Shown here: positions 7,157 to 64,000 of the stretch, one piece after another
Position numbering within the stretch: position 1 is the stretch's first letter
Layout of the letters: each line of letters begins with the position of its first letter
IMG/VR virus record: IMGVR_UViG_3300035698_022190
Span: 146,209-210,208 of that record
DNA: 64,000 nt
Reading direction: 5' to 3' (one strand)
Program-made: the position numbers and the translations under genes
Notes under the pieces: generated by a model
Seen by the model: the letters and a program-made list of their open reading frames with translations, nothing else
Databases searched by the model: none
What the model was told of the DNA's origin: nothing

Positions 7157-7204
7157 ACCTAAATATAAGTTAAAAGAATAGTATTACCTATTCTTTTTTA
7201 GTCG

Positions 7205-7414
7205 CTAGGTGAGGTCTAGACGTCGAGAAGGCTTTTGCATATACTGCCATACATCTGGCGTAGTGTGCTTTACAGCCCCTTTACAGTCACAACATACTTT
7301 AGCATCAGACTCACGAGTAAAAAAGGGTGAATCTCCGCTACACACTGGGTCCGGTTCTTTATAAAACGGTTCTCCGCAAGATGTGCAGATATTTACTTTT
7401 GTGTTATTAGCCAT
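7205..7414 (-). CDS. Small zinc-ribbon protein
   Basis: CTSCG..CCDC; AGGAG RBS. Confidence 0.6.
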   Translation of the reverse strand: MANNTKVNICTSCGEPFYKEPDPVCSGDSPFFTRESDAKVCCDCKGAVKHTTPDVWQYMQKPSRRLDLT

Positions 7415-7558
7415 GGGGAAAACTCCTTTACTAGTTTAGGTTACTGTTCTTATCCCAAATTTTAAGCTAAAAGAGTCAAGTTCCCAGAGGGAATTATGTG
7501 ACTTACGTTCTACGTTATTGTTCTTATACCAATAACTTATATGTAAGCCACATAATAA

Positions 7559-7978
7559 TTAACTTGAGAGCTTTTCCTTTTCAACGTCCCATTTATGCTT
7601 CAACACAATCTTATAATGGTTAAACTGTTCATGACAATATGTACCCAGATTCATAATACCCCACCCTAAGAAAGGCCAGACACATGATCCTATAACTAAT
7701 AACATTATTAACGCTAATGTTAGGTCCTCTACCCTGTGTGAATGTAGGCTTGGATCTGTGTTTATTTCGATCATCTTAGCTACGCCCCAAATAAAAACTA
7801 GACCCGCAAAAATTCCACCAAAGGCTGTTCCTGTTCGCATATTGCGTTGGTCTTTGGAACCTCTCTGGTAGTTTCCGTCAGGCTTCCAAAGCCAAGCATG
7901 AATAGTGTGAAACCACTCTACCACAAGGGTAAGAGCTAAGTTCTTTGCTACATCTGTATTAGTCGGAGTTGCTGTCAT
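7559..7978 (-). CDS. Two-TM membrane protein
   Basis: Two hydrophobic segments; architecture like the adjacent gene. Confidence 0.7.
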   Translation of the reverse strand: MTATPTNTDVAKNLALTLVVEWFHTIHAWLWKPDGNYQRGSKDQRNMRTGTAFGGIFAGLVFIWGVAKMIEINTDPSLHSHRVEDLTLALIMLLVIGSCVWPFLGWGIMNLGTYCHEQFNHYKIVLKHKWDVEKEKLSS

Positions 7979-8342
7979 GGAAGCTCTCCTTTAACTTTTC
8001 CCAAGACTCTTTGGCCTCGTCCCATTTACGTTCGCACCACCATATAAAACGTCCGGTAAGAAAGCCTATAACTCCCACACAAAACATAAGCAGCATAGCT
8101 AAGCATATCCATAGACAGAGGGTAAATATTCCCATTATAAATCCTGCCCAGTTAGGGATATCATTAGGAACTATGCCAAAGACAATAGCCCCAAAGAAGG
8201 GAAGTGATATCAATAGACCAACAACACCACCAACTGCTCCTCCTTGGTCTTCAAGATCTGAAGAGCCCCATTCATATACTATACTATCCCAGAAGTTACT
8301 TAAAGCATGCTTTAGAATTGCACCTGTTTCTGATTTATCCAT
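7959..8342 (-). CDS. Two-TM membrane protein
   Basis: Two hydrophobic segments; Trp-rich with no in-frame TGA. Confidence 0.7.
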   Translation of the reverse strand: MDKSETGAILKHALSNFWDSIVYEWGSSDLEDQGGAVGGVVGLLISLPFFGAIVFGIVPNDIPNWAGFIMGIFTLCLWICLAMLLMFCVGVIGFLTGRFIWWCERKWDEAKESWEKLKESFHDSNSD

Positions 8343-8551
8343 CTTTCTTCTTCTTCCTTATATGTAGTAAGTGTAAGTTATACTTACGTTGACTTAAGCG
8401 TTTACGTAAGGGAATCAGCCCTCTACCATTACGCTTAGAATTATTATGCATAATATCTCCTTTAATTAATACTTAATATTAAGTATACTAGATTTCTTAT
8501 ACCAAGAATTACCTTTGCTATTTGCCAAGGAAATGCTTATATTTAAGTGTT

Positions 8552-32773: not shown

Positions 32774-34936
32774 ATGAGTTTTAATTTAAATAAAGTTGAG
32801 TATAAAGACCATTTAAAAGGGTTTTGAGCGGGCAATTTAATAGCTAATTGGAAAGCGTTGCCGAGCGAGTTCAAGAAATTTGAGCCACCATTTTTTACCA
32901 CAAAGGATGATATACTGTTTCCCTATAACTGGCAAGTGAACTGGAAAGCTGACGACGACAATGATATTGAGTATATGTATTTACACTTAATGAATAAACA
33001 TAAAACATTGCAGCTGTCAGCAAATCAAATTCGAGATGGATGATTAGAACATATAAACGATGATTATTTGTGGGTTGCCAATCAGCGTGCTTATGATTTA
33101 ATGAAAACAGGCATGGTTCCCCCAAGCACAGGAATGGCGTGTAATAATGAGTTTTCTGACAAGATTGATGCCCAAATAGAGTGTGAAATCTTTGGTGTAT
33201 TTTATCCCGATGAGCCACACAAGGCATTAAATATAGCAGATTTGCCAATTAGAACAGTTGGCGAAGGTATTGCTTATCACGCCTCAAGAGTTTATGTGGC
33301 GATGTATTCTTTAGCTTTAAACAGTCAATCGCCATTAGAGTTGTTAGATAAAGCAATCCAATATGGGAATGATAAAACAAGTGAGATTTATAATTCAATA
33401 AGAGTAAGTTTCAAAAATAGTTATACTTGGGAAGAAGCGAGAGATTTCTTTTATGAAGAATATCAAAAGAACAACTCTGACTACGATTGGGCGTTAGATG
33501 CTGAGATTAATTTTGGTGCTGTTCTAATTGCTCTGTTATGGGGTGAAATGGATTACAAAAAGACTGTGATGATTGGTACTCTTGCAGGATGGGATTCAGA
33601 TTGTAATGCAGTTACAGCAGGGTCATTGGTTGGATATGTAAAAGGATTCAAACATCTTGAACAGGTTTTTGGTAGAAAGATTTATACTAATTATAATATA
33701 GCAAGAACTCGTAAGAATATGCCTGATTATTTACCTAATGTAAGTGGCGCTGAAGATACTTTTGAGTTCATGGCAGATAGAATGATTAATTTTATGACAA
33801 TAGATAATGGAGATAAAATGAAAAAAGTAATATTTTGTATTGGAGACAGTAGAACTGCTGCAGGACACAGTCCTTGGTACACACCAGCTCCCGATAGTTA
33901 TCCTTTTTTCTTACAGCAAGAAATGGGGAATGGGTATGATGTTAGACAGTGGGGACAAGGTGGCACTTCTGTAACTAAGGGAGTCCATTGGAGTATCTGG
34001 GATGGTTTTGAAGGTAACCCGGCTTTGTCTTTTCAGCATTTAAAAAATGTTCAGCAAATAGAGAGTTTCTGGGATAAAGCTTTTCCTGGAATGCCTTTTA
34101 ATGAAACTGAGATAATTAACATCGTCAATTATGGTACTAATGATGCGATGAATAATAGATGGCCTACAACTAAAGCGAACTTTAAAAGGGATTACAAAGC
34201 ATTAACTTGGCTACTAAAAGGTAAAACATACCTTTGTTTACCACAGCCAACTTTTGGTACAGGTGAAGACCATGTTTATAACTCGTCAATTTTAGAAGTG
34301 CACGCATTAATAAATGAGCTTTCCAAAGAAACAGGATGCCCCACAATAGACTTTTATACAGGTACAACAGCTAGTATGTCGCCTGTTGATGGGCTACATT
34401 TCGGAGCATTAGGCAATATGCACTTTGCTAATGCAGCAAGTAAAGAATTAAAAAATGACTCACCAATAATACCACCAATAATCGGAGAACCTATGGAAAC
34501 ACCAATAATTAAAATTGAAAATAATAAACTATCCGTAACTAATTTTGATCCAACTGTTACAAATTATAGCTGGCAGTATAGTAAAACATTGCATGGTTAT
34601 GATGAATGGCTTGGTTTTGGAACAGAAATGGACATTAAGCCGAGATTCCAAATAGATGGACATTATTTCTTTTGTTACGCAAGAGATAATACCACTGATG
34701 GTAGAACACCTGATTCTAAGAGGGTGATATATAAATCAGGCGCCCCGGCCCCAATATGCGGATGCACAGATTCGGAAGCAACAAATTATAATCCAAACGC
34801 CACAGAAGATGACGGCACATGCATATACTCTAACCCCACCAATAATGATAAAGTTGTTTTAGAGATGCGAGCACATCTTTTAACTGCTACAAATGCATTA
34901 ACTGCCATTGAAGACTTATTTGATGATATTGAGTAA
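32774..34936 (+). CDS. ADP-ribosylglycohydrolase fused to SGNH/GDSL hydrolase (2 TGA=Trp)
   Basis: GF*AG..IANW, ADDDNDIEY, IRDG*L, GWDSDCN; IGDS, YGTNDA, DGLH; GCTD..A.NYNP.AT.DDG.C repeat. Confidence 0.8.
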
Positions 34937-47214: not shown

Positions 47215-49884
47215 ATGTCGGATAAAAAAACTTTAGAGCTGCGTAGAAGCGATTTTGCGGAGAACTTTTTATACTTAGATGGTAGTTCATTTTCTTTAGA
47301 TGACTATCCACATATGCGTGCAATCTACAATGAGTCTGCAAAAAACATTGTTTTAAAGTTCAGTAGACAGACTGCAAAATCAACCACGTTGGCAAACATA
47401 ATGGTTGCGAACAGTGCGCTTATTCCCCATTTCCGAACACTTTATGTAGCGCCGACCGTTGATCAAACAAAAGTTTTCTCACGAGATCGTGTGTCCCCAG
47501 TATTGGAAACTTCTCCTTTAATGAAGCAACACTATATTAATAGTGCAATGCCTCAAAACGTTTTTATGAAGCAGCTTCTAAATTATAGCAAGATGTACCT
47601 TCGATATGCGCTTCTCTCAGCAGATCACCTCAGAGGATATTGCCAAACGGAGTCAGCTGAATATAATACCTTGCGTGGTTGGTTACCTGTGAATAGACTT
47701 ACAACAGATGATTATGTTTTAACAAAAAATGAAGAAACAGGCGAATTACAATATCAAAAACCTACAGATATTATTATAGACGATTATGATGGACCTATAC
47801 AGATTTACAAAACTCGTGGTAAACCTATTTTAGAAGTTACACCAAAACATCGAATTCACGCATCAATTTTAAAGCAAAAACATGTTGGAGCTCCTTACGG
47901 ATCAAAATGGACTACTGATAATAGATCTTATCAAATGCAAGATAAGAATTTCAGAATGGGTATAGGGGAGCAAGATGAAATCTTTTTTAAAGATGCTTCC
48001 CCTAAATATTTTGAGTTGCCTGGTTTAAAAACTAATATAAAAGCAAATGGGCTTCCCTACGCTAATGGAAAAATTAGAGAGTTTCCTAGTATTAAGTTGC
48101 CTATAAAAGAGTTTATGATTTTTATGGGCTGATGGCTTTCTGAGGGATGAACGAGTTTAGATAAGTGTAACTTAGGTGTAGCACAAGATAAAAAACACAA
48201 TTTAGAATATTGAAATGAAATAAAATCTATTTTTGACAAGTTATTTAAAAATAAATATACACTTGGAAAGGACAATATGTGTTTTAATTTAAATAGTGAA
48301 TGACGCACTCTTTATGAATATCTAAAGCCTTTAGGTAAATCTGGCGATAAGTATATTCCCAGAGAATTATTAACATATATAAAGTATCTTCCTGGCCTTT
48401 TAAATGCACTCTACAAAGGAGATGGCGATAATCCTTCTGTTCAAAAATTAAACCAAAAAGAGTATTTACGTTTAAATACTAAATCTAAAAAATTAGCAGA
48501 CACGACACAAGAAGCATGACTGCGTCTAGGTAAACTTGCAACTATAAACCACAGAGATCGTGAGTTCGGAAGGATATATACTGTTGAAGTGAAAACCTTA
48601 ACATATGTTAATTTTCTTTTTAATAAATATAAAAAAAATAAAGAGACACAATTCGAAGAAATTAAATATAAGGGTAAAATTTATTGTGTAACAGTGCCAA
48701 ACGGGAATTTTGTTACAAGACATGCCGTTACAAAATTACCTTTAGTTACTGGCAACTCAGCTGATTTTAATTTGTTTGACGAGGCACAAGATTTAAAACA
48801 AGATATTATTCCTGTTGTACAGGAAACTATGTCAAGATCCTTATATAAGCGGTCACTATATTCAGGAACACCAAAACGTACTAAAGGCACCTTAGCTGAT
48901 TTGTGGTACATGTCTTCTCAAAATGAATATATGTTAAAGTGTCCGCACTGCAATCATTGAAATCTTTTAGATGAAAAAAATATTGGCCCATACTTTTTAG
49001 TTTGTAATAATCCTCAATGTGAAAAGGAGCTTCGCCCAGAATCAGCACAAGGAGAATGGGTTTCCACCTATTCAAATTTAAGTGACAAACCTAATTTAGA
49101 AGGATACAGGGTTTGTTTATTACATTTTGCAACAGCCCCTTGGGTAAGCTGAGAAAAAGATGTAATGGGCAAAATGAAGACTTACTCAAAAGCTGCCTTT
49201 TATAATGAAGTTCTTGCTTTAGAATATGATCATGGAGTTGCCCCAATTACAAGAAGTGAGGTTATGGCATGTGCAGATACAGATTGGCCCATGCAAGAGG
49301 AGCCCACAGCTTTAGATAAATCTTATAAGTCTGTAATGGGCATTGACTATGGACCTGTAAATTCAACTAACTCTTATACAGTAGTCAGCGTAGTACAGCT
49401 TCGCGGTGATGGAAAATTTTACAATGTTTTTAGTAAAAGATTTGTGGGTAAAGATGCTGATTACGCTTTTATACACGATGAGATACCAAAGCTAATGAAT
49501 AAATGGGATTGTGATATTTTAGCAGCTGACTATGGAATGGGAGAAGCACCAAATAGCGAGATTCAAAAACGTATAGGTAATAAAGCTGTTATTGCTTTCC
49601 AGCACAATGCAGCACAAAAAGATAAAATGCGCTGAAATAAGGCTATGCCGGCATATACGTTAAATAGAAATCAAGCAATGAATGATATTTTTAGTTTAAT
49701 AAAACAACAAAAGATTGTATTCCCAAGATGGGAAGAGTCTCAGACTTTTCTAGAAGATATTTTAAATATTCAAACAGAATATAATGAAGAATTAGGCAAA
49801 AGTAAATATATTAATGTTGGACCAGATGACTTTTTGCACGCAACTTTGTTTGCAATTTTGTCCGCCCAAATGGCGTATGTTTAA
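47215..49884 (+). CDS. terL: Terminase large subunit (GpA-like) with intein (8 TGA=Trp)
   Basis: SRQTAKST Walker A, FDEAQD Walker B, GTP motif, CPHC, MGIDYG nuclease, PDD..HA. Confidence 0.9.
47641..48756 (+). mobile_element. Intein with LAGLIDADG endonuclease in TerL
   Basis: LRGY|CQTE ... YCVTVPNG..TGN|SAD; FMG*WLSEG, ALYKGDG. Confidence 0.88.
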
Positions 49885-51470: not shown

Positions 51471-54371
51471 ATGATTGAAAAAACCCTAAATTATATTTAC
51501 GGTGATAATGACACGGAAGTCTTCTCTGTTATGGATAATAACATGGAGAAGCGCGCGTCGTACTCATCAGAGGTTCAAGACTATCTTGATAAGTTAGCTG
51601 AGTCTCCCGATAAGACGTATGCGCTCGTAAACGCATTGTCAGCAGGTGAATATTATGGGTCTAATCGTAATGGTGACTACTTCCCCGAAAAGGCACTAAA
51701 AGATTATCACAAAACATTTGAAGCTTTAGGGCATGTATATACCCACCATGTAAATAAAGATCCAAAGAAATCCTTAGGTTCAGTAAAATTTGCTCATTAT
51801 AATCCAACTATGAAAAGGGTTGAACTGGTTCTAGAATTAGATAATGCTAAAGCTAAGCCAGTTATTGAGCGCCTTGATAAAGGGGAACTGCCAGCAGTCA
51901 GTATGGGTTGCTTTCAAGCTGGTGTAAATATTATACTTAGCGATTTTTCAAAAAAACCCATTGAGGATATTCAAGTTGGCGACGAAGTACTAACACATAC
52001 AGGGGAAATACATAAAGTAACTGAATTGCATCCAAGAGATTATGCGGGAATAATGTATACTATTAATCCTGTGGGTAAATATAGGCCTTCAATTACGGCG
52101 ACCAAAGAGCATCCGTGGCTTGTAATTGAGCCAGACAAGTTTTTTGAAAAAGACGAAAAAGCTCGATTAAGACGAAGAAAAAAACTTTCGTTAGCTGACG
52201 CTGTATGAAAAGTATCTGAAGATTTATCTACACAAGACCACCTTTTAATTCCAAAACCTAAGAACGCGGACGTGATTGACATGCCTGTAGCAAAGGCTAA
52301 GCTTTTAGGGTGGTATTTAGCAGAAGGCCACACACATATTAAAGATAATGGAGTTGAATTTACGGTAAACAGGGCAGACCAAATAGTTAAAGATATAGAC
52401 TCTGTTTTAAAAACCTTAGGCTTACCAGAAACAGTAGTTATGGCACATAATGTTTCTAAAGAAGCTTTACGGCTAATAGTTTTCTCTGCAGATTTAAAAA
52501 AAGATGTTTTATATTATTGTGGAAAGTATAGTCATAAAAAAAGATTACATAGAAAAGTTTTTTATTGGAGTGATGAAGCTAAATTAGCATTTCTAGGTGC
52601 GTATATTTCTGGAGATGGTTTTTTTCACGAAAATCAAGCATATATTAGTTCTTGTAATCGTGAACTTTTAGAACAAATTCAGTGGCTTGGTTTTTCTTTA
52701 GGAATAAACTCAACACTTGGAAAAAATGAACACAAAGCAGGAAATGGTTTTTCTTTTGAAGATACAACAGAGTATATTTTAAGGTTTAGAGGAACACATA
52801 ATAGTATACTATCTAAGTATGCTGAAAAAATTTCAACTGTAAATAAGCAAGCAGTTGGTGGCAAAGGTGGACCTTTTGAATATGAAAATTTTTATCTTTT
52901 AGCCATTGAAGAAATAAAAGGAAATGAATATACAGGTCCTGTATATAATTTTGAAGTAGATGTAGATAATTCTTATGTGGTAGAACAATATGCAGTACAT
53001 AACTGTAGAGTTCCAAAAGATACATGTAGTATATGTGGAAACGAAGCAACAAAAATCGCAAATTATTGCGAACATTTAAAAAACAACATGAACAAAGTAA
53101 TGCCAAATGGTAAAAAGGTTTATGCTATAAATAACCAACCGAAGTTTTTTGACATTAGTGTAGTAACAATCCCAGCCGAAAAGACAGCTAGTTTTATTAA
53201 AAGAATATCTAGTAAAATTAAAGCATCTTTTGCCAAATCAGCAAATGAAATAGATGTCCCATTAACGTGGGCGCAAAGCATTGCAAAAACAGCATCGCTG
53301 GAAACACAAGCAGATATTAAAAAGAAAATAGACGTAAAATTAGATGCGGTTTCTGAAGACCCAAAGAAGTTAATCTTACTGTCACAAAAAAGGTTATCTA
53401 AAGAAACTATTGAAAAGCTATCTGAACATCCATTGGGCGAAGTATTGTCCACTTTAATTGGTTTACGAATAGTACCCGTTAAAGAAGATTTTCAAAAATT
53501 AGCTTTATATAGTATGGGGAAAGCAGAGGGTGCGGAAGAGTTAGCTGAAGCAAAAGTATGTTTTGAAGTTAATCCTAAATTACGTCCTATAATACCTGCA
53601 GACGTTTCTCTTGATTATTTTAATGAAAAAATTGCCGGGTTGTTAATAGAGGATTTGCCTGGAATGGCTTTAACAAAGCCTAATATAATCTCACGCAGCT
53701 TTTATAAAGCAGCACAAGTGGGATTTACAGAGCCAATCGCTACATCGGAGGAATTAAATCAGGCTTTTCCTGAAAAATCCAAACGTGAACGGAGCATGAT
53801 TAGCAAAGTTTTCTTTGGCCAACAAGAAGATCCAAAACTTAATTCTGTTAAAAGCCCAATAATTCCTTTAGGAGTATTGGGTAGTCTATATTACGGGTAT
53901 ATAAAAACATTTAACAATGTTAATACAGGAGAGTTTAAGAAGTTTTTAGCGCGACATCCATGAGTATTTACAGCTATGTTAGGTACCGCAGCCGGTGCGT
54001 CTATATTAGCTCAGAAGCGCGCTCACGGAATACATGCTTTAGATAAGCAGGCAGGATTAGTAGAGAATGCGGGACACGTGATAGGTGGTTTACTTATTAC
54101 AGTTCCAGGTTCTTATTATGCTGCTTCGTTCCCAGAACAAAAAGCACAGCAGGGGATTCCAATCTCATCTAGTCAGAATTTTTTGAGAAAACATCCCGCA
54201 CTTGTTGCTTTAGGCGCGTCCATTCTTGGCGTAACCGGAATTGGAACAGTGACTAAACAAATGAATAAATTAAAAACTTTGAATTCTAACTGACTTAAGT
54301 TTGCCAGCGTTCTAAATCGTTTAGACGAGGAAGCTTTAAATGTTATTTATAAGGATTTAATCATAAACTAA
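51471..54371 (+). CDS. Prohead maturation protease with intein and long C-terminal extension (3 TGA=Trp)
   Basis: NRNGDYFP, HHVN.D, VSMG|C, CSICG, FFDISVV.IPA; upstream of scaffold and capsid. Confidence 0.75.
51909..53003 (+). mobile_element. Intein with LAGLIDADG endonuclease in the prohead protease
   Basis: SMG|CFQAG..PIEDIQVGD.VLTH..T.EHP; LGWYLAEG, LGAYISGDG; VYNFEV..SYVV...VHN|C. Confidence 0.9.
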
Positions 54372-56179: not shown

Positions 56180-57076
56180 ATGGAAAACTTATCAGCAAGT
56201 ACTGTTAATGAGCTATTCATCCAGAAATTAGATTCTCCGGATGGATTAGAAAAAGTAGCAATGGAAGGATCTGCCTTTATTAGACAAAAGTTACGTGAAG
56301 TATCTTTTGCAAGAAAGGTTATTCAACCTCAGTATGTAACAAAAGCCGATTTAACGCGTTCAGTTAATCACGATGGTCTTGTAAAGATTGTTGATATTGA
56401 ACCTGATTCAAAAGCTATGACCGTTAACTTCCGTGGTGAACCCGACTGGAACTATATTGAAGGACCTCGTTATGAGATTCCTTTCTTTATGATCAGTTCA
56501 GAGGATTTCCAAAAAACCGAAGAAGAACTATTAGCTTACGAAATGCCTCTAACCGAGGTTATTGAAAAGAACTCAGTATTAGATATTCAAAAAATCGAAG
56601 ACACCTCGTTTTTAGCCCAAGTAGATGCAGCTGTTGAAACAGAAGCCAGCCAACTAGCGGAAGCTTATGGCACAGGTGGAATTATCAACAAAGAGGATTT
56701 CAAAGCTCTATTTGATGTGTTAGATGGTAATGAGTTACGTACCGAAATTATCTTAATGGATACAAAAATGTTTAATCGTCTGTTTTTATATGACGCTACA
56801 ACAGTCGGCGACGGCGTTGGATCAGAAACCCATGTAAATGGTTATTCTTATTCAACATTGTTCGGTCGTAGACTAATTGTATCTAATAAAGTTAGTTTAC
56901 TTGACAATAAAATCTACGGCTTCACAGCCCAAGAATTTATGGGTCAATTCTTAGTATTGAATGATGTAAAATTCTGGATCGAAAAGAAAAAGAATATTAT
57001 CTCATTTGCAGCCTATGAAAGTGTAGGTATGGGAATTGGTAATACCAAGTCCTGTGCTAGACTAACCTTAAGTTAG
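56180..57076 (+). CDS. Major capsid protein (HK97 fold)
   Basis: IRQKLRE.SFARK, IQK.ED..F, YE.VG..IGN; strong RBS; terminator follows. Confidence 0.8.
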   Translation: MENLSASTVNELFIQKLDSPDGLEKVAMEGSAFIRQKLREVSFARKVIQPQYVTKADLTRSVNHDGLVKIVDIEPDSKAMTVNFRGEPDWNYIEGPRYEIPFFMISSEDFQKTEEELLAYEMPLTEVIEKNSVLDIQKIEDTSFLAQVDAAVETEASQLAEAYGTGGIINKEDFKALFDVLDGNELRTEIILMDTKMFNRLFLYDATTVGDGVGSETHVNGYSYSTLFGRRLIVSNKVSLLDNKIYGFTAQEFMGQFLVLNDVKFWIEKKKNIISFAAYESVGMGIGNTKSCARLTLS

Positions 57077-57202: not shown

Positions 57203-57685
57203 ATGGCCGACCCAATAGTACCAACGACATATCAAGCAAAAGTAGATCGTTTAAGACGATGGCTTGGAGATAATACAACTTTAAATCAATTATTAGGTGC
57301 TCAAGAAAGCTCAGATGTATTTTTATATGAGTGCATTGATGATGCTCTAGATAAAATTAATTATACCCCACCTAGCGACGGGACTACCTATACAATTTCT
57401 GATTTTCCCTCTTGGTCAACTTTAAAATTAGGAGCTACTTTACAAGTTTTAGTTGGAAAAGGAATTTTATCAGCACGCAATACCTTAACCTACAATGATA
57501 CGGGCGGCGTAACAATCCATGATTTTGACACTTATGGTCGATATATTAATTTCTTCAATGTTTTAGTTAATGAGTATAGAAGAGCTGTGCAAAATATGAA
57601 AATCGGCGCTAATATAGACGCTGTATATGGCGGAGTTGCTTCTGAATATTCTACTTTAATAGACGTGGACGAATACGATATTTAA
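57203..57685 (+). CDS. Head-tail adaptor (neck) protein
   Basis: LRRWLGD, RNTLTYND.GG; position after capsid. Confidence 0.6.
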   Translation: MADPIVPTTYQAKVDRLRRWLGDNTTLNQLLGAQESSDVFLYECIDDALDKINYTPPSDGTTYTISDFPSWSTLKLGATLQVLVGKGILSARNTLTYNDTGGVTIHDFDTYGRYINFFNVLVNEYRRAVQNMKIGANIDAVYGGVASEYSTLIDVDEYDI

Positions 57686-58890
57686 TGCTTATTTTAAACA
57701 GCCTTGATATCACATCTTATGATGTAAATAAATTAACTGTAAGTTGGGATCTTGATACCACCCCAGAAGCTTTGTCGGGATATTCTCTGAGTCTTTACAG
57801 ATCTGAAAATCCAGGTATTTCTGGAATTGTTGGTTTTGATTTAGTAGAATCGGGAATTGCTGCAACTACTTATCATTATGATGATTTTTCTGTTTCAGGA
57901 ATATGGGACCCACTAAGAACTTGGTATTATAAGATAAAATTTACAGAACTTGCTACTTTAGAAGAATCTGTACAACCAACTACACCCGCTTTTCGTAAAG
58001 CAACTACCACAGATAGAGCAGCAATTGAAATAGTTAGACGTAAAGGTATTGCCTTAGAAAGATATTCAGGCCGTGACTTTTTTGTTATTAAAAAACGTAC
58101 ATATGGAACACATTGTAGTGAGTGCTGGGATGCTACTTTACAAAGAATTGTAAATGATTCTTGCCCTATTTGTAAGGGTACTGGATGGGTAGACGGATAC
58201 TTTGGATCCATTTACTTAAAAGGAATGCTAAACCCAGCTCCGAAATATAACCAAATTACGATGTTTGGTGAATGGATGCCACACGATGCTTTATTTACGA
58301 TGTTAAATTTTCCGCCTATAAGAACTAGAGATATTATTATAGATGATCGGAACCAGAGGTGGATTGTAAAACAAATTAGAAAAACCGAAAAACTTGGTTA
58401 TACAATTGAACACAACGCACAATGTGCACTAATTTCATTTGACGATCAAATTTATGATTTGGAAAAAGATACTTTAGAAATTGCTTTAGCAGTTTTACAA
58501 ACTGACGTGGTTCAGGCCGCAGACCAACAAAGTGTATATGCGGTTGTGAAACAATTACTAGATAGCTATTGGTATGAATCAGATCAAGGAGAAACGGCCG
58601 TAGCGGTTCAATGGGTAAATAGTTTAAAAAGAGTAATCGGGAGCTACACGACAGCAAATACAGCAACTTTTGAAAATGTCAATATTACTGATATTTTTCA
58701 CAGCTATGGTACTGCAACCAATTTAAGTATGTGGTCTGTTTTTATTAATAGGATGGTAGCTACGAAGCAAACAATTACTTCTATTACAGATTCAGGTTCA
58801 AATATTGTAATAACTTTTAACAGTAATTTAGAATATGATTTAGTATCTGGAGATGAAATTGAGCTTTGGGGGCCAATTGATTCCTTATAA
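57685..58890 (+). CDS. Head closure/neck protein: FN3-like, zinc finger and duplicated C-terminal domain
   Basis: CSECWD..CPICKGTGW..GY; C-terminus paralogous to the next gene. Confidence 0.6.
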   Translation: MLILNSLDITSYDVNKLTVSWDLDTTPEALSGYSLSLYRSENPGISGIVGFDLVESGIAATTYHYDDFSVSGIWDPLRTWYYKIKFTELATLEESVQPTTPAFRKATTTDRAAIEIVRRKGIALERYSGRDFFVIKKRTYGTHCSECWDATLQRIVNDSCPICKGTGWVDGYFGSIYLKGMLNPAPKYNQITMFGEWMPHDALFTMLNFPPIRTRDIIIDDRNQRWIVKQIRKTEKLGYTIEHNAQCALISFDDQIYDLEKDTLEIALAVLQTDVVQAADQQSVYAVVKQLLDSYWYESDQGETAVAVQWVNSLKRVIGSYTTANTATFENVNITDIFHSYGTATNLSMWSVFINRMVATKQTITSITDSGSNIVITFNSNLEYDLVSGDEIELWGPIDSL

Positions 58891-59246
58891 TGCCTGATAA
58901 AATTAAGCATTTATTAGACGTATATTGAGGTAATCCAACAGAACAGGATACTGCAGTTTTAATTGAGTTTGTTGATTATATGACAAAGGCAACAGGCGGT
59001 TATACTAGCGCCGATTCGGCGACTATAGAAACTTATAATATTCATTCAGATTTTCATGTTAATGAAATTGCTTCAGATTTAAATTTATGGCACATAACAG
59101 TTAATAGACTCACCACTTTTAAAAATTGTATTGATTCCATTGCCAATGATGGAACAAATGTGATAATTACTTTTAATAGTAATTTAGGATATGATTTGAT
59201 AGCGGGAGATGAGATTGAACTATGGGGCCCTTTAGTAACAACATAA
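58890..59246 (+). CDS. Paralog of the preceding C-terminal domain (1 TGA=Trp)
   Basis: LLDVY* aligns with LLDSYW; shared ITFNSNL.YDL..GDEIELWGP. Confidence 0.75.
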
Positions 59247-59258
59247 CCAGTTAGCTAT

Positions 59259-60218
59259 ATGCAAACACTTTTATTTATTACCCCGCACCTTTCAACGGGC
59301 GGTTTACCACAGTATCTGCTTAAGAAGATTGAAACTTTAAAAAACGATTTTGTTGTTTATGTTCTAGAATACGCAAATGTAACAACAAGTTATCGCGTTC
59401 AGAGAGATCAGATAGAAGCCTTACTAGGCGATAGGTTTATATCACTGCCTAACGAAAATAGGTCTGCATCCTTTATTGAAGCTGTTAAACAAGTCGATCC
59501 CGACATTGTTCATTTAGAAGAACATCCCGAATGTTTCTGGTATTTCTATGAAGATGCGCCATTCATCTGGTTATATAGAAATGAACGAAAATATACAATT
59601 TTAGAAACCTGTCACAACTCTACTTTCAATGTCTCACAAAAAAAGTTTTTACCAGATCGGTTTATTTTTGTGAGCCAAGGACAAGCAGATCGATATAAAG
59701 AGCTTGATGTCCCATTTAATGTAGTAGAGTACCCAATTGAAAAACAAACTAGAATTTATTCTAAAAAAGAGGCTTGCATCAAGTTAGGAATTGACCCTCA
59801 AAAGAAAAATGCAATTACTGTTGGGCTGTTTACTTCAGGAAAAAATCAGGGGGCTATTTGGCCTATTGCCAAAGACATGATTAATGAAAAACTTCATTTT
59901 CATTTTGTTGGTAACTTAGCTGTCAATTTTGAAAAATACTGGAAACCCTTACTAAATGATTTACCAAATAATTGTACAGTATGGGGTGAAAGAACTGATG
60001 TAGATATATTTTATCAGGCCGCAGATATACTGTTGTTCCCCTCTATTCTGGAAACTAATCCCCTTGTTGTACGTGAAGCCCTATCTTGGGACCTTCCAGT
60101 GCTTATGCGTAACTTACTTATATATAATGATGCATATACATCATTAAAAAATGTTTATTATTTTGAAGCGGATATCGCAAAAGATATAAATCAAATAAAA
60201 CAAATCTTACAAAATTAA
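59259..60218 (+). CDS. GT4-type (GT-B) glycosyltransferase
   Basis: PHLSTGGLPQY, VGLFT.GKNQ, FPS..ETNPLV.REAL. Confidence 0.85.
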   Translation: MQTLLFITPHLSTGGLPQYLLKKIETLKNDFVVYVLEYANVTTSYRVQRDQIEALLGDRFISLPNENRSASFIEAVKQVDPDIVHLEEHPECFWYFYEDAPFIWLYRNERKYTILETCHNSTFNVSQKKFLPDRFIFVSQGQADRYKELDVPFNVVEYPIEKQTRIYSKKEACIKLGIDPQKKNAITVGLFTSGKNQGAIWPIAKDMINEKLHFHFVGNLAVNFEKYWKPLLNDLPNNCTVWGERTDVDIFYQAADILLFPSILETNPLVVREALSWDLPVLMRNLLIYNDAYTSLKNVYYFEADIAKDINQIKQILQN

Positions 60219-60219
60219 T

Positions 60220-63009
60220 ATGAAACATGAACTAAAAACTGCTTATAAAAGTACGAACAAAACTGAACGAAAAATAACTCTAAAATCAGCAGACATATTC
60301 TGTAATTTTTCTTTTATAGGAGGACCTAGAGTAACCTTAGTGGGAACTGGTATTAAAAAGTATAGAGTAACCTTTATAGATTTAGATAAAAATAAAATAG
60401 TGTTTGCTACTGAAATCGCAGCAGGAGAATGGGCATCCGCTAATACAAAATATTTTGTAAATTGGAAGATTGATGTATACGACGGTAGTACGTTAATTGA
60501 TTCGCATACTTTAAATTTAAAAAATAAGAATGTTTATATTCAATTTAATAGTAGTGCTCTTGGAGATACTCTCGCGTGGATTCCTTATATGGACAAATTT
60601 AAAGAAAAACATGACTGTAATTTATTTGTATCTACATTTAAAAATAATTTATTTAATAAACGTTATGTTGACTTTACACTCGTAGAGCCAGGTACACCTG
60701 TTGGGGATATTTATGCTATTTATAATATAGGTGTTTTTAGTGATTTAAATAAATCTAAAGTAGATCCCCGCACAGTTTCTTTACAAAGACTTGCAACAAT
60801 TATTCTTGGTCTCCCAGACGGAGAAGTGCAGGCACGAGTAAACCCTGTTGTGAGCCCCAGACCCATTGAAGAAAAGTATGTTTGTATAGCTCCATATGCA
60901 ACTGCCCAAGCTAAACATTGGAATAATGTTATAGGGTGGCAAGCAGTTGTTAATTATTTAAATAAGAACGGCTATAAAGTACTTCACATATCCAGCCAAG
61001 GAAGCGGTTATATGGATAACCCTAAGATAACAGGAACTGAGTATGTTGGAAACCTTTCATTAAAAGCACTAATGCCTTATATTTATCATGCTGAGGCTGT
61101 AATCGGCGTGAGTTCCGGGTTATCATGGCTCTCTTGGGCTTTAAAGCAAAAAACAATTATGATCTCTGGCTTTACAGAAGCCTGGTATGAGTTTTCTAAA
61201 AATTGTCTTAGAGTAACTGCTCCTAATGTCTGTACCGGGTGTTTTAATGACAAAGAGATTGATTTTGATAAAGGTGACTGGAATTGGTGTCCTAGACATA
61301 AAGGCACAGATAGGCAGTTTGAATGCTCTAAACAAATTGATTTTGTTAAAGTTTTACAAGCTTTTAAGGATCGCCAGAAGCTTACCTTTGAGTTCCCCAA
61401 AGGAAAAGAAAAAGATTTTGAGTATCTTTGGAACGAAATATGGAATAGAAAAGAATATTATCATGAAGAATGTCACATAGAAAAAAACGATGTTGTTGTT
61501 GATATAGGAGCAAACATAGGTGTATTTAGTGCGTGGGCCTTAGATCAAGGTGCTAAGCAGGTCTATTCGGTAGAGCCTGATATGCTTAATTATAAATCAT
61601 TGCTGGAAAACATACCAATAGGTTATAAATCTAATATTGCTATATCAAATAAAACGGGTATAGTAGACTTATATGTTGATGGAACAATAGGCGGTCATTC
61701 TATTCTTACACCACCAGAAGGCCATCCCACACAAACGGGGGACACTTATAAAGTAAAAACAAAAAGTTTAAAAGATTACTTTGCTACAAATAATTTAAAA
61801 CATGTAGACTTTTTAAAAGTGGATACGGAAGGAGCAGAAGTGGATATTCTTGCTGACTTAAATGATCTAGATACAACCATAAATAAATTGGCGCTGGAAT
61901 TCCATCACCCACTACATTCCGATGAAGTTTTTAATTCCTTTATTTCTAATTTAGAAAAATATTTTAATAAAGTTCATTTTAATCGAGGACATTATGAGTC
62001 TTTAGTATCTGCTTGGGATAGAAAAGAAAAGATAAAAATTAAAAGTATGGTGTCTGAAAATGGTCCAGTTTTAGTAGTAGGATCGCCAGCTATGGGCGAT
62101 TCTCTTTGTGCTACACCAGTTTTAAATAAACTATTTAAAGCTTATCAAGAGGTTATAACAGTATTTAGTTATGTCCCTGAGATTTTTACAAATAATCCAA
62201 GGGTAAAAGAGGTTTTTAATTTACATGAATATGAGGGGCAAAAATTGAATGATAAGTTAAGTAAATACCCAAGAAAATATGTGCATGAAACTTTTGTTGA
62301 TATATTTGATTCTAAAAATATGGTACATAACCTAACGGATATTCGACAATACCATGCCTCTTTTTTAGGGTTTTCTTTGCTACCAAATGAAATGACTTGC
62401 AATTTTTATCCTGAAAAAGATAGTAATTTAGATTTACCTGAAAAATATGTAGTACTTCATCCGGCAGTTACTTGGGACTCAAGAACTTGAGGTAGGCAAC
62501 AATGGCAAGAATTAGCTGACACTTTAGCTACCCAAGACATAGCCAGCGTTTTAATTGGAAAGGAAACTTCTGAAATATTGGCCGATAATAAAGGAACTCT
62601 AAATAAACCTTTAATGAGCTTAGATTTAAAAAAGGGCAAGGAGTATATAAATAAAACCTCCCTTTCTGAAACGTGGCACATCTTAAACAAAGCTGTTGCA
62701 GTTGTTACGATGGATTCAGGGATATTACATTTAGCAGGCACAACTAATACCCATATTATACAATTAGGAAGCTCTATTAATCCATTATTAAGAGCTCCAT
62801 ACAGGGGAGGTACACAAAGGTATAAATACTCTTATATACCCGGTAAATGTGATATATTTTGTGGTTCAAATATGTCTTATGGATTGGCAGAACATCAAGA
62901 TATAACAGGGGTTCCACTAATTTCTGAATGTTTAGAAAATAAACCAACATTTGAATGCCATCCGACTGTAAAAAATGTTGTAAATGAACTTAAAAAGGTG
63001 TATATTTAA
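60220..63009 (+). CDS. Autotransporter O-heptosyltransferase (Aah/TibC-like) + FkbM methyltransferase + GT9 domain (1 TGA=Trp)
   Basis: ALGDTLAW, SSGLSWL.W, C.GC..W.WCP..FECS; DIGANIG, LKVDTEGAE; MGD, WDSRT*, DSGILHLA. Confidence 0.85.
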
Positions 63010-63390
63010 ATGAAGATAGAAATTTCAAACGGAGAGCTAGTTGATAAAGTTTGTATTTTAAAAATTAAGCTAAAAAATATTAAAGATCCTGATAAATTAA
63101 TTAATATTCAAAAAGAGTTCGATATGCTATCGAGTAAAATGATTTCCTTTTTACCTATGAATGCTTTTCAAAAAGAACTTATAGATCTAGAGAAAGTTAA
63201 TGAAGATTTATGGGTGATTGAAGATAAACTCCGTGTTAAAGAAAAAGAACAAGAATTTGATCAAGAGTTTACTGAGTTAGCGCGCTCAGTTTATTTTACT
63301 AATGATCGTCGTTCTGATGTTAAAAAGAAGATAAACCTAATAACCAAATCAGAACTTGTAGAAGAAAAAAGTTACCAAAAATATAATTAG
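63010..63390 (+). CDS. DUF6165-like protein
   Basis: S.GELVDK..IL.IK, N..LW.IED..R, ARSVY.TND.R, EEKSY. Confidence 0.8.
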   Translation: MKIEISNGELVDKVCILKIKLKNIKDPDKLINIQKEFDMLSSKMISFLPMNAFQKELIDLEKVNEDLWVIEDKLRVKEKEQEFDQEFTELARSVYFTNDRRSDVKKKINLITKSELVEEKSYQKYN

Positions 63391-63398
63391 GAGATTTT

Positions 63399-64000
63399 AT
63401 GACACTTCCCAGAGCTGCACAGTTAAATATTGAAGTGCTGACGCACACTGAAGGTGATGCGGCATACAGCCCAAAAGATAATTTTGCTGGCCCTACTGCG
63501 CCCGTAGACCCACAAGATGGTTGAGAATGGTGGGATAGTGCTGAAGAAAAATTAAAAGTTTATAATGCCACAGACGTCCAATGGATACCTGTGGCTTCAA
63601 TATTTGTAGGAGAAGATCCACCTAATTTACCAAATGAAGGTGATTTATGATGGGACCCCGAGGACATATTAGGTGTTGGTAGTGGAACATCAGGAACTGA
63701 TGGTTCATCCGGTATTGGTGGTGGAGACGGCACAGACGGATCATCTGGCACTTCTGGAACATCGGGAACATCGGGAACATCCGGAACATCCGCCACAGAC
63801 GGAACATCCGCAACAGACGGAACATCAGGAACAAATGGCACATCCGGAACAGATGGAACTTCCGGAACAGATGGAACTTCCGGAACTTCAGGAACATCAG
63901 GAACATCGGGAACATCGGGAACATCCGCCACAGACGGAACATCAGGAACATCGGGAACATCCGCTACAGATGGGACATCAGGAACATCAGGAACATCCGC
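63399..64000 (+). CDS. Tail-fibre-like protein with Gly-Thr-Ser/Asp collagen-like repeat, 3'-truncated (2 TGA=Trp)
   Basis: GGAG RBS; P.DG*EWWD and EGDL*WD; GTS/GTD/ATD triplets to window end. Confidence 0.8.

What the first reader, a model, noticed from the sequence alone, without database searches (positions are those of the whole stretch)
59259..64000. Protein O-heptosylation locus next to a Gly-Thr-Ser collagen-like fibre
Seen: GT4, an Aah/TibC-like + FkbM + GT9 tri-domain enzyme, a DUF6165-like gene, then a fibre of G-T-S/G-T-D triplets with no Pro in the repeat. Known: Aah/TibC heptosylate Ser residues of autotransporters using ADP-heptose. Inference: dense O-glycosylation stabilises or camouflages the fibre. 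A TGA just inside the GT9 region makes the full-length enzyme read-through dependent.
Basis: partly seen in the sequence, partly recalled or inferred. Interest (0 to 1): 0.6.

Follow-up and report, generated by a model that had tools for sequence, protein, structure and literature searches.

The report
Phage collagen-like fibre glycosylation locus
A salt-lake phage carries sugar-adding enzymes, one a close relative of the E. coli protein heptosyltransferases TibC/Aah, next to a proline-free Gly-Thr-Ser collagen-like fibre gene; dozens of other phages show the same pairing, so these phages probably sugar-coat their fibres, and the in-frame TGA is simply how this phage writes tryptophan.

Summary
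Window 59259-64000 encodes a GT4 glycosyltransferase, a 929-aa BAHT(TibC/Aah)-FkbM-GT9 fusion, a DUF6165 protein and the start of a Pro-free G-T-S collagen-like fibre. All lie on one strand, tightly packed behind the capsid genes.

The BAHT domain scores 332 bits on the Aah/TibC equivalog model (cut-off 200). It keeps the catalytic Asp, the phosphate- and heptose-binding Thr/Lys/Trp and all four iron-finger Cys. It lacks the Arg that contacts adenine in TibC.

The TGA is not a special read-through signal. The phage reads TGA as Trp in many late genes: relatives have TGG at these positions, and the genome encodes a Trp-like tRNA(UCA).

The link to the fibre is supported by comparison. Of 51 non-redundant phage loci with a BAHT homologue, 29 carry G-[ST]-S repeat genes within 10 kb, against 0 of 28 control loci. 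Sixteen carry Thr-Pro mucin-like ORFs, and 44 carry the GT4 partner.

The fibre continues at the other end of the record. Two Thr/Ser-rich β-repeat ORFs follow it and are further candidate substrates.

Heptose as the sugar, and stabilisation or camouflage as the purpose, remain inferences. I found no description of this in the literature.

The parts
59259..60218 (+). GT4-family glycosyltransferase (319 aa), first gene of the glycosylation block
   Evidence: PF00534 39.9 bits and PF13692 38.9 bits. PHROG 2170 glycosyltransferase. A homologue lies within 10 kb of the BAHT gene in 44 of 51 non-redundant loci. BAHT+GT4 fusion proteins of about 695 aa exist.
60220..63009 (+). 929-aa tri-domain enzyme: BAHT (TibC/Aah-like protein O-heptosyltransferase), FkbM methyltransferase and a second GT9 glycosyltransferase
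   Evidence: ORF open under TGA=Trp. Domain matches. The homologue in the closest relative is a 936-aa uninterrupted ORF.
60301..61365 (+). BAHT domain (residues 28-382)
   Evidence: TIGR04414 332 bits against a cut-off of 200. TibC structures 4rap/4rb4 match at E 5e-64. Equivalents of D110, T226, K230, W305 and Cys339/342/358/370 are kept; the R286 equivalent is Leu.
61492..61905 (+). FkbM-type methyltransferase domain (residues 425-562)
   Evidence: TIGR01444 82.9 bits against a cut-off of 37.7; PF05050 64.7 bits. PHROG 8156 methyltransferase.
62062..63009 (+). Second GT9 (heptosyltransferase-family) domain (residues about 615-929) with a C-terminal four-Cys cluster
   Evidence: PF01075 94.9 bits; TIGR02193 77.5 bits, below its equivalog cut-off of 185. 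A weak alignment to WaaC keeps the N-lobe 'MGD' motif.
62488..62490 (+). In-frame TGA read as Trp757
   Evidence: Homologues have TGG here in 26 of 26 loci. It aligns to the Trp of the WaaC 'KHW' motif. It is present in contigs of three public runs.
63010..63390 (+). DUF6165 protein (126 aa), function unknown
   Evidence: PF19662 54.6 bits. Atlas clusters are all DUF6165, some sharing DUF4254. Present in 12 of 51 BAHT loci.
63399..64000 (+). N-terminal 200 aa of the collagen-like fibre: a 91-aa head with two 'WW' motifs, then G-T-S, G-T-D and A-T-D triplets from 63672. It runs off the window and the record.
   Evidence: PF01391. Composition. The N-terminus is 73% identical in the closest relative. 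The C-terminal 398 aa lie at the start of the same record, G000 3-1199.
63522..63524 (+). In-frame TGA (Trp42 of the fibre)
   Evidence: Aligned to W in the closest relative. Genome-wide TGA/TGG exchange.
63648..63650 (+). In-frame TGA (Trp84 of the fibre)
   Evidence: Aligned to W in the closest relative. Genome-wide TGA/TGG exchange.

Best explanation
This is a late-expressed virion-protein O-glycosylation module.

Proposed mechanism:
- The BAHT domain, a GT-B enzyme of the TibC/Aah family, transfers a sugar from a host-made nucleotide sugar onto Ser (and possibly Thr) hydroxyls. The sugar is most likely a heptose. The targets are the Ser/Thr-rich structural proteins encoded next to it: the Pro-free G-T-S collagen-like fibre, and probably also the two Thr/Ser-rich β-repeat proteins that follow it.
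- The fused GT9 domain and the neighbouring GT4 enzyme would extend this first sugar.
- The FkbM domain would O-methylate (cap) the glycan.
- The whole fusion is translated because this phage decodes TGA as Trp with its own tRNA(UCA).

Shown: gene content, family membership, conserved catalytic residues, TGA=Trp, and the recurrent genomic linkage.
Inferred: the substrate, the identity of the sugar, the order of enzyme action, and the benefit (triple-helix stabilisation, protease or immune shielding, or receptor binding).
For: 1. Family. TIGR04414 scores 332 bits against a cut-off of 200. TibC matches at E 5e-64 over residues 30-378. The catalytic Asp, T226, K230, W305 and the four iron-finger Cys are invariant in 54 of 54 phage-clade sequences. 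Their roles are taken from PMC4358343.

2. Enzyme next to substrate is the rule in this family. E. coli and Pantoea BAHT genes sit directly upstream of autotransporter genes.

3. Linkage.
- 162 IMG/VR contigs encode a relative.
- After dereplication to 51 loci, 29 have G-[ST]-[ST] repeat genes within 10 kb, at a median distance of 2.7 kb. None of 28 terminase-centred control loci do (Fisher p = 6e-8).
- 16 of 51 loci have Thr-Pro mucin-like ORFs, against 0 of 28 controls.
- 27 of 30 loci with full flanks have one or the other.
- In the reverse direction, 6 of 47 contigs picked only for a (GTS)5 DNA pattern carry a BAHT gene, including 4 of the 7 contigs of 90 kb or more.

4. The enzyme set is a conserved module. 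GT4 is present in 44 of 51 loci, FkbM in 26 and the second GT9 in 14. BAHT+GT4 and BAHT+FkbM fusions are common. One lineage has an eight-gene glycosyltransferase/methyltransferase cluster convergent on a 3,117-aa G-[ST]-S protein.

5. Late structural context. The genes lie on one strand, 0-12 nt apart, directly after the capsid genes, and use recoded TGA like the terminase and other late genes.
Against: - No experiment; everything rests on sequence and gene neighbourhood.
- The Arg that contacts adenine N1 in TibC, and is needed for its activity, is Leu here. It is Thr, Ile or Val in 51 of 54 phage-clade sequences but Arg in 4 of 4 bacterial ones. The donor may therefore not be ADP-heptose.
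- The phage encodes no GmhA-type (SIS), HldE-type (cytidylyltransferase-like) or NTP-transferase genes.
- TibC modifies Ser but not Thr, and acts on β-helices rather than collagen helices.
- Two phage contigs rated complete carry (GTS)5 repeats without a BAHT gene, so the enzyme is not obligatory for such fibres.
- 22 of the 51 BAHT loci show no G-T-S repeat within the DNA held. Many of those loci are truncated.
Confidence: 0.6

Rival explanations
1. The true or main substrates are the two Thr/Ser-rich β-repeat proteins encoded just after the fibre (G000 1199-1843 and 1843-2454), not the collagen-like fibre. Their 20-aa repeats form strand-turn-strand arrays, closer to the β-helical repeats that TibC/Aah modify.
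For: - The reading frame is supported. Differences between repeat units fall 115/102/285 on codon positions 1/2/3, and one unit has TGG where the others have TGA.
- The genes abut the fibre gene.
- A single-sequence AlphaFold model gives 7-residue strands and 3-residue turns with period 10, with block-mean pLDDT of 66-74 across residues 31-130 of the repeat array.
- TibC acts on strand-loop-strand repeats.
Against: - The recurrent partner across phages is the G-T-S collagen-like gene or a Thr-Pro tract, not this repeat type.
- No true homologue of these two ORFs was found in the other loci; the matches were low-complexity only.
- The model is low-confidence overall (pLDDT 56) and has no significant PDB match.
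- This reading does not exclude the main explanation.
Confidence: 0.15
2. The enzymes remodel the host envelope, adding or methylating heptose on the lipopolysaccharide core to block superinfection or mask receptors. Their position next to the fibre gene would then be incidental.
For: GT9 is the LPS heptosyltransferase family. The C-terminal domain's best named matches are WaaC/WaaF-type models. Phage glycosyltransferases are usually interpreted this way.
Against: - The GT9 matches to LPS equivalogs are far below cut-off (77 against 185 bits), whereas the protein-heptosyltransferase model is far above its cut-off.
- The genes sit inside the late structural operon and need the late-type TGA=Trp decoding.
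- Linkage to Ser/Thr-rich structural genes is specific, at 29 of 51 loci against 0 of 28.
Confidence: 0.1
3. The module glycosylates the fibre, but the first sugar is not ADP-heptose-derived. The phage clade has changed donor, for example to a GDP-activated heptose or another nucleotide sugar.
For: - The Arg that reads adenine N1, proposed in PMC4358343 to exclude guanine, is replaced in 51 of 54 phage-clade enzymes but kept in 4 of 4 bacterial ones.
- The phage clade is separated from the bacterial enzymes by a long, fully supported branch.
- The phage has no ADP-heptose genes.
Against: - The Trp that binds heptose O4 and the Thr/Lys that bind the β-phosphate are invariant.
- The position that sets D,D- versus L,D-heptose choice carries the Aah-type Ser.
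- The whole-domain score is well above the equivalog cut-off.
- A second GT9 enzyme is part of the module.
Confidence: 0.3
4. The TGA in the GT9 domain is a regulatory stop. It would yield mainly a 756-aa BAHT-FkbM product and a little full-length enzyme by read-through.
For: Under the standard code the ORF ends at 62490. Before the phage tRNA(UCA) accumulates, a truncated product would be made.
Against: - TGA sits on a Trp that is TGG in 26 of 26 homologues.
- There are 239 in-frame TGAs genome-wide in the code-4 gene set, including 8 in the terminase.
- TGA and TGG exchange freely with relatives: 12 and 22 cases, against 5 and 5 other codons.
- The genome has a Trp-like tRNA(UCA).
- The closest relative has the same fusion without any TGA.
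- A stop at 756 would cut the GT9 fold in the middle.
Confidence: 0.05

Closest known systems
TibC / Aah bacterial autotransporter heptosyltransferases (BAHT family, TIGR04414; PDB 4RAP/4RB4; PMC4358343)
   Same: About 38-40% identity over the whole enzyme, covering the N-terminal β-barrel, the GT-B core, the catalytic Asp, Thr/Lys on the β-phosphate, Trp on heptose O4 and the four-Cys iron finger. The gene is placed next to a repetitive, Ser-rich surface protein.
   Different: - Phage-encoded, and forms a separate clade.
- Fused to FkbM and a second GT9, with a GT4 partner.
- Lacks the adenine-contacting Arg286.
- The neighbouring candidate substrates are collagen-like or mucin-like virion proteins, not type V autotransporters.
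- No activity data.
Glycosylated collagen-like spore-surface proteins BclA (Bacillus) and BclA3 with the SgtA glycosyltransferase (C. difficile; PMC7157674)
   Same: A filament with an N-terminal anchor, a collagen-like region rich in Thr, and a globular C-terminal domain. It is O-glycosylated in the collagen-like region by a dedicated glycosyltransferase encoded nearby.
   Different: Those are bacterial, use G-P-T triplets, and use other sugars and enzyme families. Here the fibre is viral, Pro-free (G-T-S), and the enzyme is of the BAHT family. The resemblance is functional only. The C-terminal domain could not be modelled.
Mycobacteriophage virion glycosylation (Freeman et al. 2023, PMC10527164, as cited in PMC12619734)
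   Same: Phage-encoded glycosyltransferases that decorate the phage's own structural proteins.
   Different: There the targets are C-terminal tails of capsid and tail-tube subunits in actinophages, with unrelated glycosyltransferases. Here the targets would be long repeat fibres and the enzyme is a BAHT.
Stop-codon-recoded phages (TGA to Trp, 'code 4'; bioRxiv 10.1101/2021.08.26.457843)
   Same: Recoding is concentrated in late and structural genes, a suppressor tRNA is encoded by the phage, and other regions remain compatible with the standard code.
   Different: That work surveyed gut phages. This phage comes from salt-lake and marine samples. Its tRNA(UCA) carries an unusual long extra arm.
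Glycosyl-threonine-stabilised cuticle collagen of the vent worm Riftia (own knowledge, not checked here)
   Same: A collagen with little hydroxyproline, in which sugars on a hydroxy amino acid in the triplet stabilise the triple helix. This is a precedent for the 'stabilisation' idea.
   Different: That collagen is from an animal, carries galactose on Thr in the Y position, and includes Pro in the triplets. Nothing here tests helix stability.

Membership tests
BAHT (Aah/TibC protein O-heptosyltransferase, TIGR04414) | Whole-domain profile score above the curated equivalog cut-off | tested here: met
   332.4 bits against a cut-off of 200, residues 28-382. TibC PDB match E 5e-64.
BAHT (Aah/TibC protein O-heptosyltransferase, TIGR04414) | Catalytic base Asp110 and the donor-binding residues Thr226, Lys230 and Trp305 | tested here: met
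   These are D116, T228, K232 and W303 in the window protein. They are invariant in 54 of 54 phage-clade sequences.
BAHT (Aah/TibC protein O-heptosyltransferase, TIGR04414) | Arg286 contacting adenine N1 (ADP specificity; its mutation abolishes or diminishes TibC activity) | tested here: not met
   Leu284 here. The position is Thr, Ile, Val or Leu in 51 of 54 phage-clade sequences and Arg in 4 of 4 bacterial ones.
BAHT (Aah/TibC protein O-heptosyltransferase, TIGR04414) | Four-Cys iron-finger motif | tested here: met
   C338, C341, C357 and C369 are invariant. Metal binding itself is not testable here.
BAHT (Aah/TibC protein O-heptosyltransferase, TIGR04414) | N-terminal flattened β-barrel (PF21129 TibC_1st) | tested here: inconclusive
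   26.4 bits against a cut-off of 27. The pairwise alignment to TibC does run through residues 26-97.
BAHT (Aah/TibC protein O-heptosyltransferase, TIGR04414) | Adjacent autotransporter substrate with strand-loop-strand repeats | tested here: not met
   There is no autotransporter. The neighbours are a collagen-like fibre and two Thr/Ser-rich repeat ORFs, which have no match to the repeat models.
BAHT (Aah/TibC protein O-heptosyltransferase, TIGR04414) | Transfers heptose from ADP-heptose to Ser of a protein | not testable with these tools
   Needs mass spectrometry or an enzyme assay.
Collagen-like triple-helix protein (PF01391) | Gly at every third residue over long runs | tested here: inconclusive
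   The Pfam match is 107 bits on the C-terminal part. However, 16 of 96 triplets there start with Ala (A-T-D). Related loci have 91-100% Gly, partly by construction of the scan.
Collagen-like triple-helix protein (PF01391) | Forms a trimeric triple helix | not testable with these tools
   The triplets contain no Pro and no charge pairs. Stability is unknown.
FkbM methyltransferase (TIGR01444 / PF05050) | Profile score above cut-off | tested here: met
   82.9 bits against 37.7, and 64.7 bits against 22.7.
GT9 heptosyltransferase family (PF01075), second domain | Profile score above the family cut-off; membership of a specific LPS heptosyltransferase equivalog | tested here: met
   At family level it is met: 94.9 bits against 22. 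It is not an LPS WaaC/WaaF/WaaQ equivalog: 77.5 bits against 185 and lower.
TGA-to-Trp recoded phage ('code 4'-type) | In-frame TGA at positions where relatives have Trp/TGG | tested here: met
   26 of 26 TGG at Trp757. Our TGA pairs with relatives' TGA 16 times, TGG 12 times and other codons 5 times. Relatives' TGA pairs with our TGG 22 times and other codons 5 times.
TGA-to-Trp recoded phage ('code 4'-type) | Phage-encoded tRNA with anticodon UCA | tested here: met
   G000 65786-65883. It is most similar to the phage's own tRNA-Trp(CCA). Which amino acid charges it was not tested.

The most novel reading that the evidence does not exclude
A large, previously undescribed viral clade of BAHT-type enzymes has switched substrate, from bacterial autotransporters to the phages' own Pro-free collagen-like (G-T-S) and mucin-like (T-P) virion fibres. 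It may also have switched nucleotide donor, given the loss of the adenine-reading Arg. With GT9, GT4 and FkbM partners it would build dense, methyl-capped O-glycans that take the place of hydroxyproline in stabilising these giant fibres (up to about 3,100 aa). That would make them a viral 'glyco-collagen'.
Probability: 0.3. Interest if true: 0.8.

Novelty: new variant of a known kind. Interest (0 to 1): 0.62.

Why it matters
Protein O-heptosylation is known almost only from virulence autotransporters of Proteobacteria. Virion glycosylation in phages is known from a few actinophages.

If phages widely glycosylate collagen-like or mucin-like fibres with BAHT-type enzymes, three things follow:
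- It adds a new substrate class and a new biological setting for this enzyme family.
- It explains how Pro-free G-T-S 'collagens' could be stable and protease-resistant.
- It bears on how aquatic phages meet their hosts, because glycan-coated fibres may act as adhesins or shields.

It also offers compact, fused enzymes for glyco-engineering of repeat proteins.

The idea can be tested directly. A cultured relative exists (Microcystis phage Mel-JY01), and E. coli supplies ADP-heptose.

In practice, the locus is mis-annotated under the standard code. Recognising TGA=Trp is needed to call these genes correctly.

Tried and rejected
No result.
- **AlphaFold, single sequence, fibre C-terminal 119 aa:** pLDDT 39, unusable.
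- **AlphaFold of the first Thr/Ser-rich ORF:** only moderate confidence. Foldseek against PDB gave no match with E <= 0.001; the weak rows were generic β-helices.
- **Protein Atlas:** I did not send it to any other outside tool. It has only a PHROG unknown-function match.
- **ADP-heptose or other nucleotide-sugar genes in the phage:** PF01467, PF13580 and PF00483 are absent. The only Epimerase-family hit is a PseB-like dehydratase far from the locus.
- **Promoter and terminator scan of 54-64 kb:** no more sites than in shuffled sequence.
- **Genome-contig scan with the single BAHT sequence:** only two MAG contigs, uninformative for the host.
- **Low-complexity tblastn with the Thr/Ser-rich ORFs:** composition matches only, no true homologues.
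- **Literature searches** for phage with TibC/heptosyltransferase, collagen-like with glycosylation, and Mel-JY01: no description of this system.
- **Selenocysteine reading of the tRNA(UCA):** rejected. The Rfam tRNA-Sec score is below threshold (32.5 against 47), the acceptor/T-stem geometry is 7/5, and the recoded positions are Trp in relatives.
- **Minus-strand 'D-V-P' reading of the repeat:** rejected. The G-T-S frame alone is continuous with the non-repeat N- and C-terminal domains and with the operon's strand.
- **Joining the two record ends:** not done. They neither overlap nor meet in frame, so the fibre's full length is unknown.

Full report
**Where the window lies.** The window is the last 64,000 bases of a 210,208-bp IMG/VR virus record (G000:146209-210208). 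Near-identical sequence is held by salt-lake and marine metagenome runs. The record carries 25 ordinary tRNA genes, one tRNA with anticodon UCA, and a dubious tmRNA call.

**The observation.** Under the standard code, the region 59259-64000 shows these ORFs on the + strand:
- 59259-60218
- 60220-62490
- 62578-63009
- 63010-63390

A frame full of G-T-S triplets runs to the window end.

| Gene | Model | Score (bits) | Cut-off (bits) |
|---|---|---|---|
| GT4 | PF00534 | 39.9 | 26.4 |
| Aah/TibC domain, residues 28-382 | TIGR04414 (equivalog) | 332 | 200 |
| FkbM, residues 425-562 | TIGR01444 | 82.9 | 37.7 |
| Second GT9 | PF01075 | 94.9 | 22 |
| DUF6165 | PF19662 | 54.6 | 27 |
| Fibre | PF01391 Collagen | match | – |

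The genes are 0-12 nt apart and follow the capsid genes (major head protein 56180-57076). The scan found no promoter or terminator signal above chance.

**The TGA.** The ORFs 60220-62490 and 62578-63009 join into one 929-aa protein if TGA 62488-62490 is read as an amino acid. This is not peculiar to this gene.
- Reading TGA as sense merges many fragmented late ORFs. Examples are the terminase (8 TGAs, plus an intein), an 883-aa ORF (8 TGAs) and the fibre (2 TGAs).
- Coding density rises from 0.82 to 0.89 genome-wide, and from 0.67 to 0.99 in places. Other regions are unchanged or slightly worse, as expected if early genes still use TGA as a stop.
- The amino acid is Trp. At residue 757, all 26 homologous loci have TGG, and the codon aligns with the Trp of the WaaC 'KHW' motif.
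- Across the late region, our TGAs pair with relatives' TGA (16), TGG (12) or other codons (5). Relatives' TGAs pair with our TGG (22) or other codons (5).
- Within the Thr/Ser-rich repeat genes, one repeat unit has TGG where its sister units have TGA.
- The tRNA(UCA) at G000 65786-65883 aligns best with the phage's own tRNA-Trp(CCA) in the acceptor stem, D arm, anticodon loop and T arm. It carries an extra variable arm of about 22 nt. This is why ARAGORN and Rfam call it Sec-like, although it scores below threshold.
- Contigs from three public runs cover the TGA without a difference.
- The closest relative (IMGVR_UViG_3300028299_000364) has the same gene order. Its fusion is a 936-aa ORF without any TGA.

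The full-length tri-domain enzyme is therefore the intended product. 'Read-through dependence' is true only in the general sense that all recoded late genes need the phage's tRNA.

**The enzyme.** The N-terminal domain aligns with TibC over 350 residues. The functional residues are defined in the TibC structure paper (PMC4358343). I checked them in an alignment of 54 phage-clade sequences and four proteobacterial plasmid enzymes.
- *Invariant in all sequences:* the catalytic base (D110 in TibC, D116 here), the β-phosphate ligand Lys (K230) and the heptose-O4 ligand Trp (W305). The four iron-finger Cys are invariant too.
- *Nearly invariant:* the β-phosphate ligand Thr (T226) is Thr in all 54 phage-clade sequences and in three of the four bacterial ones; the fourth bacterial sequence has Ser.
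- *Stereoselectivity position:* it carries the Aah-type Ser, which in Aah tolerates both D,D- and L,D-heptose.
- *Adenine contact:* the Arg that hydrogen-bonds adenine N1 (R286) is Arg in the four bacterial enzymes. It is Leu here, and Thr, Ile or Val in 51 of 54 phage-clade sequences.
- *Tree:* a quick maximum-likelihood tree separates the four bacterial sequences from the 54 viral and metagenomic ones by a long branch with 100% SH-aLRT support. It was a quick search with midpoint rooting only.

The protein is thus a clear BAHT-family member that departs from the described enzymes at one donor-binding residue. The phage has no GmhA-, HldE- or NTP-transferase-type genes, so the donor must come from the host.

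The C-terminal GT9 domain is only distantly related to solved heptosyltransferases and to the BAHT domain. It ends in its own four-Cys cluster.

PHROGs holds no family that matches the BAHT domain. In the cultured-phage collection only Microcystis phage Mel-JY01 and three huge-phage metagenome records encode one. In Mel-JY01 it is the C-terminal part of a 1,226-aa protein that also has a GT4 domain.

**The fibre and what follows it.** In the window the fibre has two parts:
- a 91-aa head with two 'WW' motifs, each including one TGA-encoded Trp;
- 36 triplets.

The record's first bases continue the same repeat in frame 3. That part has 96 triplets, then a 110-aa non-repeat C-terminal domain, and a stop at G000 1199. 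The two record ends neither overlap nor join in frame. The assembly therefore broke inside the repeat, and the fibre is at least 598 aa long.

In the C-terminal part the X position is Thr in 85 of 96 triplets. The Y position is Ser in 69 and Asp in 17. There is one Pro. The first position is Ala in 16 triplets, always as A-T-D. Relatives rarely show such Ala interruptions. This is the only collagen-like gene in the genome.

Two ORFs of 214 and 203 aa abut the fibre's stop (G000 1199-1843 and 1843-2454). They contain 9 and 8 TGAs, and roughly half of each is Thr+Ser. They are built from 20-aa units with an aromatic residue every 10 residues. Differences between units fall 115/102/285 on codon positions 1/2/3, which identifies this frame as coding. 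A single-sequence model predicts 7-residue strands joined by 3-residue turns, with block-mean pLDDT of 66-74 across residues 31-130 of the repeat array and no significant structural match.

A 306-aa ORF follows. It has only a PHROG unknown-function match.

**Is the enzyme linked to the fibre?** In Proteobacteria the BAHT gene sits directly upstream of its autotransporter substrate.
- *Relatives found:* 162 IMG/VR contigs encode a relative of the BAHT domain at 39-53% identity. The protein database holds 884 relatives at E <= 1e-10. These include stand-alone enzymes, BAHT+GT4 fusions and BAHT+FkbM fusions.
- *Dereplication:* the 80 fetched loci, plus the Mel-JY01 locus, fall into 51 groups at 90% DNA identity.
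- *Partner genes within 10 kb of the BAHT gene*:

| Partner | Loci of 51 |
|---|---|
| GT4 homologue | 44 |
| FkbM | 26 |
| Second GT9 | 14 |
| DUF6165 | 12 |
| G-[STAN]-[STDNA] repeats of at least 6 triplets | 29 (median distance 2.7 kb) |

- *Effect of flank length:* among the 30 loci with at least 8 kb on both sides, 19 have such repeats.
- *Control:* none of 28 terminase-centred loci (388 kb) has them (Fisher p = 6e-8).
- *Size of the repeat proteins:* they are often giant (1,100-3,200 aa), Pro-poor (0.2-2.4%) and 35-58% Ser+Thr.
- *Mucin-like ORFs:* sixteen loci carry large ORFs with Thr-Pro tracts, against none of the controls. Together, 27 of the 30 full-flank loci have one type or the other.
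- *Reverse test:* of 47 contigs picked only for a (GTS)5 DNA pattern, most of them small fragments, 6 carry a BAHT gene. That includes 4 of the 7 contigs of 90 kb or more. Two contigs rated complete do not, so the enzyme is not obligatory.
- *An extended cluster:* one lineage (L016 and nine near-identical contigs) has an eight-gene cluster convergent on a 3,117-aa G-[ST]-S protein. The cluster holds GT9, a GT2-like gene, two FkbM genes and two GT4 genes, one of them fused to BAHT.

**Caveats.**
- The control set is small and phylogenetically narrow.
- The repeat detectors are simple regular expressions applied to all six frames.
- Many loci are truncated.

**Interpretation.** The most economical reading is a late-expressed module that O-glycosylates the phage's own Ser/Thr-rich structural proteins.
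- The BAHT domain would put the first sugar on the protein.
- The second GT9 domain and GT4 would extend it.
- FkbM would methylate it.

Family membership, the catalytic residues, TGA=Trp and the recurrent linkage are shown. The substrate, the sugar, the order of action and the benefit are inferred. Precedents for glycosylated collagen-like surface filaments exist in spores (BclA3/SgtA, PMC7157674). Precedents for phage virion glycosylation exist in mycobacteriophages (cited in PMC12619734). I found no paper that describes BAHT enzymes in phages or their link to collagen-like fibres.

**Rivals.**
- The Thr/Ser-rich β-repeat proteins are the main substrate. This is compatible with the main idea.
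- The module modifies the host envelope. This is unlikely, given the late structural context and the specific linkage.
- The clade uses a changed sugar donor. This remains open because of the missing Arg.
- The TGA is regulatory. I reject this.

**Not done, or not possible.**
- The fibre's C-terminal domain could not be modelled.
- The host is unknown.
- The two record ends were not joined, because no reference spans them.

Noticed in passing
G000 65786-65883 (+), outside the window: The only tRNA with anticodon UCA is 98 nt long. Its acceptor stem, D arm, anticodon loop and T arm resemble the phage's own tRNA-Trp(CCA), but it carries an extra variable arm of about 22 nt. ARAGORN labels it tRNA-SeC, and Rfam scores it 32.5 bits on tRNA-Sec (threshold 47). 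It appears to be a Trp-type opal suppressor of unusual shape.
   Followed up: partly
G000 1199-1843 and 1843-2454 (just past the window end, after the fibre's C-terminal part): Two abutting ORFs of 214 and 203 aa, roughly half Thr+Ser, are built from 20-aa repeats with a TGA-encoded Trp or a Tyr every 10 residues. The frame is supported by third-position variation. A low-confidence model gives a regular strand-turn-strand array.
   Followed up: partly
window 63672-64000 and G000 3-866: About one 'Gly' position in six in the C-terminal part of the fibre is Ala, always in the triplet A-T-D after G-T-S. Collagen-like genes in related loci show this rarely or not at all. Its meaning is unknown; it could be a kink, a register mark or a recognition site.
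   Followed up: partly
window 47215-49884 and 51471-54371: The terminase large subunit has 8 in-frame TGAs. The 966-aa ORF downstream is possibly portal-related. Both contain LAGLIDADG/Hint intein-like insertions.
   Followed up: no
window 32774-34936: A 720-aa fusion of an ADP-ribosylglycohydrolase domain and a GDSL lipase/acylhydrolase domain. It is open only with two TGAs read as Trp.
   Followed up: no
window 57685-58890 and 58866-59246: A 401-aa protein and the following 126-aa protein share a C-terminal domain of about 85 aa. Both are conserved, in the same order, in the closest relative, between the capsid genes and the GT4 gene. They match no family.
   Followed up: no
G000 about 22.2-24.2 kb (- strand), outside the window: A PseB-like UDP-GlcNAc 4,6-dehydratase (152 bits, below the equivalog cut-off) lies next to a weak PseH-like acetyltransferase. 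This is a second sugar-related gene set, far from the fibre locus.
   Followed up: partly
L029, L033, L039, L052, L053, L059, L061, L064, L074, L079 and others: Many phage loci with a BAHT gene carry large ORFs (up to about 1,900 aa) with Thr-Pro mucin-like tracts: 16 of 51 loci, against 0 of 28 controls. These often occur where no G-T-S gene is seen. This suggests the phage enzymes serve several kinds of hydroxy-amino-acid-rich proteins.
   Followed up: partly
window 63711-64000 (read laying): In four salt-lake and marine runs, summed contig depth over the G-T-S repeat is 75-980, against 0-9 over the neighbouring unique genes. Many other genomes in these communities therefore carry near-identical G-T-S repeat DNA.
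   Followed up: no
L005 (Microcystis phage Mel-JY01, PP395634.1) 4750-8430: The gene annotated 'methyltransferase FkbM' is a 1,226-aa protein with an N-terminal GT4 domain and a C-terminal BAHT domain (317 bits on TIGR04414). A G-[ST]-S repeat region lies about 5 kb upstream. There, the deposited annotation calls a gene on the opposite strand.
   Followed up: partly
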